The position numbers were made by a program, and so were the translations under genes. From Saccostrea echinata (lineage: Eukaryota), in NCBI RefSeq assembly GCF_033153115.1, contig NW_026889754.1:12152001-12216000 (forward strand): a stretch of 64,000 bases of DNA. Direction: 5' to 3'. Positions 60,671 through 62,045 of this stretch are shown here, one piece after another; positions within the stretch are counted from its first letter, which is position 1; each line of letters begins with the position of its first letter. The notes beneath the pieces were generated by a model. That model saw only the letters and a list, made by a program, of their open reading frames with translations, was not told the DNA's origin and made no database searches.

Positions 60671-62045
60671 TTAAATTGGTACTTTAAACATCTTTCCATG
60701 ACCTGGAACAATATAGTCTGCCATCTTGAGAATTTTGGTCCTGCTTATCTCTTGACGGTCTGGATTGAGGCTGCATTTCCTCCACAAAGCTGGTTCCACA
60801 AGGTCCTCTTGGCATTGGAAAAGATCGCCAACTATCGCTACAGTTCCTAACTCAGTGTCTTTAACCAGTACTGACACATCTGTACATGAGGATCCTGGAG
60901 TGGATATAACCTTGACATGCTTGTCGACAGGAAAGGGTTGACCCGATTCAAAGTCATGTCTGTGATGTAAATCTCCCAGGCACATGTCAAATGAGGCAAT
61001 GTAGACTGCGTCCGGGAAAAGATTAAGGTTTCCCACATAGTCCATATTGCCATTTGTGCAGATACAACACTCCACATCATCAACGGATACCTTATTCTTC
61101 TGGAGGCCCTCCAGAATGTGATCTTTGTCCTTGGGGTGACCAGTGTTCACGATAATTGTCATAGGGTCCTTCAGGAGCGTAATGGTCCCCCCAGTCTTTA
61201 CTTTGTCCTGCTCCTCGACTGGTATTGCATAGCCCTCTTTTAGAATGACGACTTCATATGACTCGGGCTCACTCCCACATTCATCCACCACTGTCCATTC
61301 ATCTTCTTCTTCCAGGGCCTCACCTTCGTCCTGCACAATGGACTCCTGTTCTACACCCTGCCAACTTGTCCTCCTTGACTTTACCTGATTTTCTAACTCT
61401 GCCAGATCTTCTTTCCCCCATGCTCTAAACTCTGACCTCTTCCCTGGGGACATTGTGCACACTATTGCCATAAGGATCGTGTATGAGTACTGCTGGTGTG
61501 TTTACTGGCACCATCTTGAAGTTGTCTGTCAGAGGCCACCTCATCGTATGGGTCAACTGACCCATCTGATGCAGTGTCCTCTGCATGATAAGATACTCCC
61601 GTGGCAAGGATATCTTCTGGTTGACATGGTCCACCAAGTCCTGAACTGTTGCTGCCGGACCTAAAAGGTATTGGGCCAGTGCAAGAAGACAGGAGGCTCT
61701 CAGACTGTGATAGTCTGATGAAGCATTGAGCTCATTCCAAGGTCGGTCCCAAAAAACTCTGGGAATGTGGTATTCCAAAACATGGTGCTTTAAGTGCTTG
61801 GACCGCCCATGGCACCCGTCCACTGGACAGGAAGATCTCTTATCCCCCGAATTACTGCTTCTTACTGGGATGTCTTCAGGCTCATGTGCAGGCACAATAC
61901 TTGTATGTCGTCTTCTATGCTTAAATGGTGGAAGCCTCTCTTCCCCATTTGATGAATCCTCATCCGTTTCGTCCGTTTCATGGACTAGCACCGCATCAGC
62001 TTCGTCTGCTGTGACGTAATCTTCAAGCTCTGCGTCTCTCTCCAT
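60671..62045 (-). CDS. Gypsy-B ORF3: acidic N-terminus, C2H2-like finger, helical region, acidic linker and a catalytically altered MBLAC1-like metallo-beta-lactamase domain (one frameshift near 61480)
   Basis: CPVDGC..HLKHHVLEYH; PAVLIH/..ILMAIV junction; C-terminal ~195 aa collinear with MBLAC1 (LKEGY, TITLL, VGNLNLF, TPG, DVSV, GTVAIVGDLF, ADYIVPGHG). Confidence 0.75.

What the first reader, a model, noticed from the sequence alone, without database searches (positions are those of the whole stretch)
60671..61262. Gypsy retrotransposon carries an MBLAC1-like nuclease fold with its metal ligands selectively removed
Seen: the domain is intronless, lies between the integrase and the PPT/LTR, and follows MBLAC1 motif by motif. 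Yet THGHSDH reads TNGNMDY (61037-61054), TPGH reads TPGS and DTG reads NTG, while the GD and PGHG motifs and hydrophobic core are kept with no stop in the domain. Established: HxHxDH plus the TPGH His bind the two metals of MBL-fold enzymes, and human MBLAC1 is an endoribonuclease in histone pre-mRNA 3' processing. Inference: losing all three site-1 His plus one site-2 His in an otherwise conserved fold looks like selected inactivation rather than random decay. The product could be an RNA-binding pseudo-enzyme or a decoy against a host nuclease or S-phase pathway. I do not know of this cargo being described in LTR elements.
Basis: partly seen in the sequence, partly recalled or inferred. Interest (0 to 1): 0.85.

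Follow-up and report, generated by a model that had tools for sequence, protein, structure and literature searches.

The report
Retrotransposon-borne MBLAC1 copy without metal ligands
A family of Gypsy-type jumping genes in this bivalve genome has captured the host nuclease gene MBLAC1 as a third gene. In one branch of the family, which includes the dead copy in this window, the metal-binding residues were lost but the protein stayed under selection, so it looks like a transposon-encoded pseudo-enzyme.

Summary
Window 60671-61471 (minus strand) encodes an intronless MBLAC1 homologue (PDB 4v0h, E 1.9e-31; model TM 0.91). It reads VNTG / TNGNMDY / TPGS and keeps GD and PGHG. It lies between integrase-PHD and the PPT/3' LTR of a Ty3/Gypsy element.

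The window copy itself is dead. It is 5'-truncated, pol is broken about six times, and ORF3 carries a frameshift. Its stop-free MBL stretch is not significant (P about 0.4-0.5).

The pattern is real at family level. All four 'A-type' genomic copies and an intact 467-aa database protein share the ligand loss. A sister 'B-type' subfamily, with a fully open 8.8-kb element and Magallana gigas proteins, keeps HxHxDH. The transposon-borne domains form one clade (100/99), and A is not accelerated.

After the loss, the MBL part has dN/dS 0.14-0.23 at dS about 0.5, lower than integrase in the same copy pairs. All changes at invariant columns lie at the active site.

The ORF3 N-terminal zinc-knuckle module is also fused to TatD DNase in related elements. 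A heterodimer with host-type MBLAC1 is predicted (0.84 against a best control of 0.00).

Verdict: a selected pseudo-nuclease cargo. No description was found in the papers searched. How it acts is inferred, not shown.

The parts
59889..60120 (-). 3' LTR (232 bp, TGTAGTG...CTTCA) of the Gypsy copy
   Evidence: It aligns to both LTRs of the C22 sister copy at 95-97%. Sequence read.
60121..60134 (-). Polypurine tract AAAAGGGAAGGGAG, abutting the LTR
   Evidence: Sequence. The same tract lies before the 3' LTR in the C22, C27 and C6 copies.
60135..60670 (-). Non-coding spacer between the ORF3 stop and the PPT
   Evidence: No long ORF. Sequence.
60671..61471 (-). 266-codon open frame: acidic linker plus MBLAC1-derived domain (C-terminal part of ORF3, cut off from its N-terminal part by a frameshift)
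60674..61267 (-). MBL-fold domain (198 aa), MBLAC1-like, with 4 of 7 metal ligands replaced
   Evidence: AF2 model pLDDT 96.3. Foldseek top hit 4v0h, TM 0.91-0.93, rmsd 1.5 A.
61139..61150 (-). Motif I, VNTG (canonical VDTG)
61037..61057 (-). Motif II, TNGNMDY (canonical THGHSDH: H116N, H118N, D120 kept, H121Y)
60890..60901 (-). Motif III, TPGS (canonical TPGH: H196S)
60824..60832 (-). Motif IV, VGD (bridging Asp221 kept)
60695..60709 (-). Motif V, VPGHG (His263 kept here; Arg in the intact relative P0001)
61480..61495 (-). Approximate site of the frameshift that splits ORF3 in this copy (C22 and P0001 read straight through here)
61425..62045 (-). ORF3 N-terminal part (206 codons): acidic tail, KRRRR-like basic patch, CCHH zinc knuckle, all-alpha module ending in PVNxPAVLIH
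   Evidence: No Pfam hit. In the P0001 model the module has pLDDT 85-97. Homologues are fused to TatD.
61767..61829 (-). CCHH zinc-knuckle motif CPVDGC-x9-H-x4-H
   Evidence: Conserved in all N-module homologues. Beta-beta-alpha in the model.
62051..62081 (-). Polypyrimidine tract plus AG, 5 nt before the ORF3 ATG (splice-acceptor-like)
   Evidence: The same arrangement is present in B-type copies. Inference only.
62130..63020 (-). Integrase C-terminal part with PHD finger
   Evidence: Pfam PHD 2.5e-8.
62860..63312 (-). Integrase catalytic core (rve), in a different frame
   Evidence: Pfam rve 3.4e-11. Frames.
63269..64000 (-). Integrase zinc-binding part and upstream pol, in a third frame. 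The element runs past the window end to window-equivalent 66621, where it is truncated

Best explanation
What it is (shown). The stretch is the 3' part of a dead, 5'-truncated Ty3/Gypsy copy (window-equivalent 59889-66621, minus strand). The family carries a third gene, ORF3, behind integrase-PHD.

ORF3 layout, about 470-490 aa (shown):
- a disordered acidic tail;
- a CCHH zinc knuckle followed by a helical module;
- an acidic linker;
- an intronless domain captured once from MBLAC1.

History (shown). In the ancestor and in the B subfamily the domain keeps the full di-metal site. In the A subfamily, to which the window copy belongs, the active site was taken apart once: D->N in motif I, HxHxDH -> NxNxDY, TPGH -> TPGS, and later also H263R and Y121F in the P0001 lineage. 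Elements carrying this form went on transposing while the domain stayed under purifying selection.

How it works (inferred). The A-type domain is most likely a catalytically dead pseudo-nuclease that acts by binding rather than cutting. My preferred mechanism is that it keeps the MBLAC1 dimer face and pairs with an active MBLAC1-type subunit, either host MBLAC1 or B-type ORF3. The zinc-knuckle module would then bring that subunit to its target or hold it away, as inactive CPSF100 partners active CPSF73. ORF3 is probably expressed from a spliced subgenomic RNA.
For: The domain is cargo of the element.
- LTR pairs of 98.7-100% identity flank the sister copies. C22 and C27 have 4-bp target-site duplications (CTAT, GTTG). 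PBS and PPT are present, and ORF3 lies inside the LTRs.
- The sister B copy has gag (CCHC) and pol in the order PR-RT-RH-IN-PHD.

Single capture.
- The transposon-borne MBL domains form one clade with 100/99 support inside metazoan MBLAC1.
- Host paralogues have introns.

The ligand loss is shared across the lineage.
- It is present in the window copy, C22 (94% aa identity), two older copies, and P0001, whose cluster includes several full-length ~467-aa open members.

Selection continued after the loss.
- Window against the old copies, MBL part: dS 0.49-0.57, dN 0.07-0.13, omega 0.14-0.23, P 4e-7 and 2e-5.
- In the same copy pairs omega is 0.40-0.54 for IN-PHD and 0.47-0.61 for the N-module.
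- A against B ORF3: pS 0.83 (saturated) with pN 0.30.
- The A branch (0.43) is shorter than the B branches (0.59-1.0).

The changes are targeted.
- All 6 changes at 27 invariant columns are at the active site (P 0.004).
- The former ligand positions keep drifting: Y->F and H->R in P0001.

The fold is kept.
- Model pLDDT 96.3, TM 0.91-0.93 to 4v0h. The P0001 domain gives Z 30.5.

A dimer is predicted.
- Window domain with the mollusc MBLAC1 P0020: ipSAE 0.84, best of 3 controls 0.00, runs agree in at least 94% of contacts, partner pLDDT at least 89.
- The test's mark was reached by 51 of 78 solved complexes and 2 of 108 mismatched pairs.
- The interface includes motif II and the conserved VGNLNLF stretch.
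- MBLAC1 forms crystal dimers, and a ligand-triple mutant made to disrupt zinc binding was used as the control in the RNase assays (PMC6303110).
Against: - No expression data.
- The window copy cannot make full ORF3.
- All four A-type copies found in this genome are broken. The intact A-type ORF3 is known only from unnamed Logan contigs.
- The within-A dN/dS rests on about 93 codons, the N-terminal half of the domain, because the old copies are truncated there.
- The dimer prediction would probably pass for any pair of MBLAC1 homologues and may come from memory of 4v0h. P0020 is also not this species' own protein.
- In the window lineage, site 2 still has Asp120, Asp221 and His263, with Tyr in place of His121. 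A mononuclear site is therefore not excluded.
Confidence: 0.6

Rival explanations
1. Neutral hitch-hiker. The MBL domain became dispensable in the A lineage, perhaps because only the N-terminal module matters to the element. The ligand loss is then the first step of decay and the apparent conservation comes from short elapsed time.
For: - The N-module is the constant part of ORF3 across elements, while the C-terminal domain is swapped (MBL, TatD or none).
- All A copies in this genome are broken.
- Window against C22 gives omega 0.5-0.66, not different from neutral.
Against: - Omega is 0.14-0.23 at dS about 0.5 within the ligand-less lineage, lower than integrase in the same pairs.
- An intact 467-aa ORF sits at 12-16% aa divergence from the window copy.
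- The A branch is not longer than the B branches.
- No invariant scaffold column is changed.
Confidence: 0.15
2. Still an enzyme. The A-type domain has a remodelled, perhaps mononuclear, site using Asp120, Asp221 and His263 (plus Tyr/Asn/Ser). It retains a hydrolase or nuclease activity with a different metal or substrate.
For: - The window, C22 and old copies keep Asp120, Asp221 and His263.
- From my own knowledge, not tested here: active mono-zinc subclass B2 lactamases carry Asn at position 116.
- Strong purifying selection covers the motif-II region.
Against: - P0001, the only intact A-type protein, also has H263R and Y121F. That leaves just two Asp of the seven ligands.
- The motif-I Asp is lost in all A copies.
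- All three site-1 His are lost.
Confidence: 0.12
3. Decoy or competitive inhibitor without dimerisation. The dead domain binds the RNA substrate of host MBLAC1 (histone pre-mRNA 3' ends) or some other ligand and blocks processing, shifting S-phase or histone supply in the element's favour.
For: - The fold and the groove-lining scaffold are kept.
- Human MBLAC1 is a histone pre-mRNA 3' endonuclease (PMC6303110).
- ORF3 has a basic KRRRR patch and a zinc knuckle that would suit nuclear or nucleic-acid targeting.
Against: - Nothing here tests RNA binding.
- The function of mollusc MBLAC1 is unknown.
- The nematode orthologue swip-10 is linked to copper homeostasis rather than histones (PMC11441482, title and abstract only).
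Confidence: 0.13

Closest known systems
Human MBLAC1 (PDB 4v0h), MBL-fold histone pre-mRNA 3' endoribonuclease
   Same: Clear homologue: E 1.9e-31, 36% identity, TM 0.91-0.93, rmsd 1.5 A. Same five-motif layout, no beta-CASP insert, and a similar predicted dimer face.
   Different: Four of seven metal ligands and the motif-I Asp are replaced. It is intronless, fused behind a zinc-knuckle module, and encoded inside an LTR retrotransposon.
CPSF100 and other catalytically dead MBL-fold partners of active nucleases (cited in PMC6303110's reference list; otherwise my own knowledge)
   Same: An MBL-fold paralogue that lacks metal ligands yet is conserved and works by pairing with an active paralogue. 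This is the working model proposed here.
   Different: CPSF100 is a host beta-CASP protein with a proven complex. Here pairing is only predicted, and the protein is transposon-encoded.
LTR retrotransposons with captured host enzyme domains as extra ORFs: orchid Ty3/Gypsy with an ALKBH-type m6A demethylase (PMC9289625) and bdelloid LTR elements with captured ORFs (PMC5408684)
   Same: A host-derived enzyme domain is fixed between pol and the 3' LTR and spreads with the element (titles and abstracts).
   Different: The cargo is MBLAC1, and TatD in sister elements. One sub-lineage keeps the cargo after losing its catalytic residues. No paper pairing MBLAC1 or TatD with LTR elements as cargo was found.
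B-type ORF3 of the same family (G000:C27:14332767-14341588; Magallana gigas XP_065941932.1 and XP_019926190.1, annotated 'MBLAC1(-like)')
   Same: Same element backbone (pol 82.6% nt identity), same ORF3 layout and N-module, and the same capture event.
   Different: It keeps VDTG / THGH(L/I)DH / TPGH / GD / PGHG. ORF3 is only about 45-50% identical in protein, with saturated synonymous sites.
Host ligand-poor MBLAC1 paralogues and isoforms in molluscs
   Same: This genome's C47 cluster has a paralogue reading TSGRSDK / TPGQ / VGG. Biomphalaria, Mercenaria and Haliotis RefSeq isoforms carry a motif-II exon without the His residues. His-less MBLAC1 forms therefore recur in molluscs.
   Different: These are intron-bearing host genes. 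The transposon's A form derives from a B-like transposon ancestor, not from them (shared ECC...MCxGxLHHxHDF signature; tree).

Membership tests
Ty3/Gypsy LTR retrotransposon | Direct LTRs ending TG...CA, with PBS and PPT | tested here: met
   The window holds the 3' LTR 59889-60120 and the PPT 60121-60134; the 5' LTR is lost to truncation. Sister copies C22, C27 and C6 have LTR pairs of 98.7-100% identity and a TGG-starting PBS.
Ty3/Gypsy LTR retrotransposon | pol domain order PR-RT-RNaseH-IN, and gag with a CCHC knuckle | tested here: met
   Pfam on the open sister copy gives zf-CCHC and PNMA in gag, then Asp protease, RVT_1, RT_RNaseH, Integrase_H2C2, rve and PHD. The window copy aligns to it over pol at 82.6% nt but is frameshifted.
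Ty3/Gypsy LTR retrotransposon | Target-site duplication showing integration of the whole unit, ORF3 included | tested here: met
   4-bp duplications CTAT (C22) and GTTG (C27). C6 has ATAG against ATAT. It cannot be tested for the truncated window copy.
MBLAC1 family (MBL fold) | Sequence and fold homology to MBLAC1 | tested here: met
   phmmer E 1.9e-31 to 4v0h. Foldseek TM 0.91-0.93. VIA Z 30.5 for P0001. It sits inside metazoan MBLAC1 in the tree.
MBLAC1 family (MBL fold) | Di-metal site: His116, His118, Asp120, His121, His196, Asp221, His263 | tested here: not met
   The window copy has N, N, D, Y, S, D, H. P0001 has N, N, D, F, S, D, R. It is a homologue but not a catalytically competent member.
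MBLAC1 family (MBL fold) | Endoribonuclease activity | not testable with these tools
   Needs a biochemical assay.
Pseudoenzyme | Catalytic residues lost, but the sequence is under purifying selection and the ORF is maintained | tested here: met
   Omega 0.14-0.23 within the ligand-less lineage over about 93 codons. An intact 467-aa ORF cluster exists. The branch is not accelerated. Limits: only half of the domain is covered, and there are no expression data.
Retrocopy / processed pseudogene of host MBLAC1 (one-off) | Single insertion with no link to an element's life cycle | tested here: not met
   At least 11 copies lie at the same position behind IN-PHD and inside LTRs, in two subfamilies, and the form also occurs in Magallana gigas.

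The most novel reading that the evidence does not exclude
A clade of bivalve Gypsy elements uses a modular accessory protein: a zinc-knuckle targeting module coupled to an exchangeable nuclease-fold domain (MBLAC1 or TatD). In the A lineage the nuclease has evolved into a transposon-encoded dead subunit. This subunit heterodimerises with, and redirects or inhibits, the host's MBLAC1 RNA-processing nuclease. It would be a CPSF100-like pseudo-nuclease made by a retrotransposon to manipulate host or element RNA 3'-end processing.
Probability: 0.25. Interest if true: 0.8.

Novelty: new variant of a known kind. Interest (0 to 1): 0.62.

Why it matters
Extra genes in animal LTR retrotransposons are rare and mostly unexplained. 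This family offers a natural experiment. The same captured nuclease exists in a ligand-bearing form and in a ligand-less but still selected form on near-identical element backbones in one genome. Relatives carry TatD DNase on the same N-terminal module.

That makes testable what a nuclease, or a dead copy of one, does for a retroelement. It also bears on the still-debated function of MBLAC1 outside mammals.

There is a practical point as well. RefSeq models in Magallana gigas named 'MBLAC1(-like)' are pieces of transposon ORF3, which can mislead gene-family counts.

Tried and rejected
Tools that gave nothing or were unavailable:
No DNA or context could be fetched for P0001 or P0002, so there is no dN/dS for them.
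- The look-up of sequencing runs listed no run. Read laying was therefore not used, and there is no evidence on expression or splicing.
The B element was analysed in two pieces.
- The ESM Atlas search of the N-module gave only scores of 0.86 or lower to unnamed clusters.
- Pfam finds nothing in the N-module.
- The VIA search of the full P0001 model was filled by MBL hits, so the N-module fold remains unsearched.
- The search of earlier findings had nothing on MBLAC1.

Readings rejected:
- One-off retrocopy. Rejected because many copies sit inside LTRs.
- Copy-specific decay of the His residues. Rejected because the loss is shared across the A lineage.
- A-type derived from the host's His-less exon or paralogue. 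Rejected by the tree and by signatures shared with B-type.

Weak evidence set aside:
- Window against C22 dN/dS (0.5-0.66) rests on too few differences and mostly reflects post-insertion decay.
- The intactness of the window's MBL frame is not evidence of selection.
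Full report
**1. What is at the coordinates**

On the minus strand, window 60671-61471 is a 266-codon open frame. It matches human MBLAC1 (PDB 4v0h) at E 1.9e-31 over residues 95-264. Pfam sees it only weakly (Lactamase_B, E 0.027).

- VNTG at 61139-61150
- TNGNMDY at 61037-61057
- TPGS at 60890-60901
- VGD at 60824-60832
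- VPGHG at 60695-60709

The MBLAC1 structure paper (PMC6303110) assigns metal 1 to His116, His118 and His196. It assigns metal 2 to Asp120, His121 and His263, with Asp221 bridging. The window therefore has H116N, H118N, H121Y and H196S, and keeps D120, D221 and H263. The motif-I Asp is also changed to Asn.

A model of the 198-aa domain built from a 35-row alignment has pLDDT 96.3. Its best PDB match is 4v0h: TM 0.91-0.93, rmsd 1.5 A, 36% identity.

**2. Setting**

Upstream on the minus strand lie four pieces:
- a 206-codon frame (61425-62045) with no Pfam hit;
- the integrase C-terminus with a PHD finger (62130-63020);
- the rve core (62860-63312);
- the integrase zinc-binding part (63269-63979).

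The three integrase pieces are in three different frames.

Downstream lie a 536-bp spacer, a polypurine tract (60121-60134) and a 232-bp LTR (59889-60120, TG...CA).

The window is G000:C5:12152001-12216000. With the flanks fetched, the copy aligns at 95.5% nt to a full sister element on C22 from 59889 to window-equivalent 66621. There it stops, so the 5' LTR and about 2 kb are missing. Pol is in at least six pieces.

ORF3 itself is frameshifted near 61480-61495. The C22 copy and the database protein P0001 read straight from the 206-codon part into the MBL part.

The window copy is therefore dead. With about 7 frame breaks elsewhere in it, an unbroken 0.6-0.8 kb stretch has P about 0.4-0.5. 'No stop in the domain' carries no weight for this copy.

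**3. The family**

A six-frame search of the genome found at least 11 loci with the domain.

A-type copies all read VNTG and TNGN(M/V)DY:
- the window copy;
- C22:11213313-11222008 (94% aa identity, one stop and a frameshift);
- two older broken copies at C6:5815880 and C27:14716744.

B-type copies number seven. Examples are C27:14332767-14341588 and C6:2183673-2191295. They read VDTG / THGHLDH / TPGH / VGD / VPGHG in a 526-527-codon open frame directly behind IN-PHD.

Structural evidence that these are real elements:
- LTR pairs are 98.7% identical (C22), 99.1% (C27) and 100% (C6).
- C22 and C27 have 4-bp target-site duplications. All have a TGG-starting PBS and the same PPT.
- The C27 element has open gag (PNMA-like plus CCHC), open pol (protease, RT, RNase H, integrase, PHD) and open ORF3.

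This is a Ty3/Gypsy family, and ORF3 is part of the transposed unit.

**4. Outside this genome**

The B-type ORF3 query found two relatives:
- P0001, a 467-aa protein from Logan assemblies;
- Magallana gigas XP_065941932.1, annotated 'MBLAC1-like' (B-type, ligands intact).

Other M. gigas entries (XP_019926190.1 and a UniRef entry) are B-type pieces.

P0001 is an A-type ORF3. It is 84% identical to the window's MBL frame and reads VNTG, TNCNVDF, TPGS, VGD and VPGRG. Only the two Asp of the seven ligands remain. Its cluster has nine members at 99-100% identity. Five of them are full-length or nearly so (457-467 aa) and the other four are shorter (99-413 aa).

**5. One capture, old split**

In a maximum-likelihood tree with mollusc, annelid, insect, nematode and bacterial MBLAC1-type proteins:
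- the transposon-borne domains form one clade (100/99);
- that clade splits into A (100/99) and B (96/93);
- the A path from the common node (0.43) is shorter than the B paths (0.59 and 1.01).

Both types are about 50% identical to mollusc host MBLAC1. The host paralogues on C47 are split over at least four exons, whereas the transposon domain is continuous. This fits capture from a spliced mRNA.

Between A and B, pol has dS 0.37 to above 1.5 in a mosaic pattern, with omega about 0.12. ORF3 has saturated synonymous differences (pS 0.83) with pN 0.30. ORF3-A and ORF3-B are thus old lineages on backbones that have probably recombined.

**6. Decay or selection?**

Four results bear on this.

(a) Invariant columns. 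Of 27 columns invariant in 31 canonical sequences, the window changes six: D41N, H72N, H74N, H77Y, H126S and T127S. Five are active-site residues, four ligands plus the motif-I Asp. T127 adjoins His196. No other invariant column is changed (Fisher P 0.004).

(b) dN/dS within the ligand-less lineage (NG86):

| Comparison | MBL part (~93 codons) | IN-PHD omega | N-module omega |
|---|---|---|---|
| Window vs old C6 copy | dS 0.49, dN 0.07, omega 0.14, P 4e-7 | 0.54 | 0.61 |
| Window vs old C27 copy | dS 0.57, dN 0.13, omega 0.23, P 2e-5 | 0.40 | 0.47 |

These values include neutral post-insertion decay, so the constraint on the active lineage was stronger still.

(c) Open frame. The P0001 cluster keeps a 467-aa frame at 12-16% aa divergence from the window.

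(d) Former ligand positions. These keep changing between A sub-lineages (Y->F, H->R, G->C next to them) while the scaffold does not.

Limits:
- The old copies hold only the N-terminal half of the domain.
- No DNA could be had for P0001.
- Window against C22 is too close to be informative.

**7. The rest of ORF3**

An exhaustive profile-free search showed that the N-terminal module occurs on its own and fused to other domains. Its signature is C-x4-C-x9-H-x4-H followed by a helical part ending PVNSPAVLIHWR. Four hits carry a TatD DNase domain and one starts with the integrase PHD finger.

In this genome, N-module plus a full TatD domain (Pfam 2e-38) lies right behind pol-PHD of related Gypsy elements on C13 and C33.

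The P0001 model gives:
- a disordered acidic tail (1-77);
- a beta-beta-alpha knuckle and an all-alpha module (about 80-248, pLDDT 85-97);
- a disordered linker;
- the MBL domain (Z 30.5 to 4v0h).

A polypyrimidine tract plus AG lies 5 nt before the ORF3 ATG in both A and B copies. A GG|GTAAGT site lies in the B leader. This suggests a spliced ORF3 mRNA, but it is inference only.

**8. Mechanism**

Shown: the capture, the lineage-wide ligand loss, the retained fold (predicted) and the purifying selection.

Inferred: the A-type domain no longer cuts and works by binding.

A predicted complex of the window domain with a mollusc host-type MBLAC1 (P0020) gave:
- score 0.84, best of 3 controls 0.00;
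- the mark was reached by 51 of 78 solved complexes and 2 of 108 mismatched pairs;
- the runs agree in at least 94% of contacts, and partner pLDDT is at least 89;
- the interface covers motif II and the conserved VGNLNLF stretch.

This shows likeness to the MBLAC1 dimer (PMC6303110 reports crystal dimers). It does not show that this protein binds. P0020 is also not this species' own protein.

My working model is a CPSF100-like dead partner for an active MBLAC1-type subunit, either host MBLAC1 or B-type ORF3, aimed by the zinc-knuckle module.

The rivals are neutral hitch-hiking, a remodelled mononuclear enzyme, and a substrate decoy. They are scored in the Rival explanations section.

**9. Known or new**

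Searches for the following found no description of this cargo:
- MBLAC1 or metallo-beta-lactamase with retrotransposon;
- TatD with LTR retrotransposon;
- bivalve LTR elements with ORF3;
- PHD-integrase Gypsy elements in oysters.

The mollusc LTR survey PMC6238403 mentions neither domain. Repbase could not be consulted.

Captured enzyme ORFs in Gypsy elements are a known kind (PMC9289625, PMC5408684). I therefore rate this a new variant of a known kind, with the selected pseudo-enzyme state as its unusual feature.

**10. Conduct**

Copies were only compared, and breaks are described only by place.

Noticed in passing
G000:C47:5993069-6024022 (loci L035, L041, L036, L042): A tandem cluster of three multi-exon host MBLAC1 paralogues. 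Gene 1 is canonical. Gene 2 reads THGHSDR / VGN / VPAHG. Gene 3 (minus strand) reads TSGRSDK / TPGQ / VGG, so the host has its own ligand-poor paralogue.
   Followed up: partly
Proteins P0034 (Biomphalaria), P0035 (Mercenaria), P0005 (Haliotis): RefSeq isoforms of mollusc MBLAC1 differ from isoform X1 only in the motif-II segment, which lacks the His ligands (CTSGKMAQTGN, CTTAHSDKVGN, CTNGHTDK). This looks like mutually exclusive exons giving a His-less isoform.
   Followed up: no
G000:C13:2121467-2123324 (L043 1489-3324, minus); G000:C33:13290433-13292300; G000:C77 (L047): Related IN-PHD Gypsy elements carry an ORF3 made of the same zinc-knuckle N-module plus a complete TatD DNase domain (Pfam 2e-38). 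A 1111-codon frame on C77 holds repeated N-modules before TatD.
   Followed up: partly
window 62051-62081 (minus), and B-type leaders in L032/L034: A pyrimidine tract plus AG lies 5 nt before the ORF3 start in both subfamilies. A GG|GTAAGT donor-like site lies about 420 nt into the B leader. Together they suggest a spliced ORF3 mRNA.
   Followed up: partly
Magallana gigas XP_065941932.1, XP_019926190.1 and UniRef entry P0232: Public gene models named 'MBLAC1(-like)' are pieces of B-type transposon ORF3. They begin inside the N-module or inside the MBL domain, and one has an internal deletion.
   Followed up: partly
window 55776-56546 and 57826-58846: Two tandem-repeat arrays lie just 3' of the element. 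Self-matches are offset by about 21-63 bp and about 156 bp, at 81-91% identity. ORFs there are repeat artefacts.
   Followed up: no
G000:C36:9508303, C5:7405904, C5:11196523, C5:5257960 (L019, L020, L028, L029): Short isolated fragments of only the last 50-70 residues of an A-like MBL domain (VPGRG, as in P0001). They occur as near-identical pairs and may be a deletion-derivative repeat family.
   Followed up: no
Pfam gave no family at E <= 0.01, so that reading is unverified here.
   Followed up: partly
window-equivalent 72662-72861 and 77078-77277 (L037): A 200-bp direct repeat pair at 98.5% identity, 4.4 kb apart, beyond the window end. It may be the LTRs of another element.
   Followed up: no
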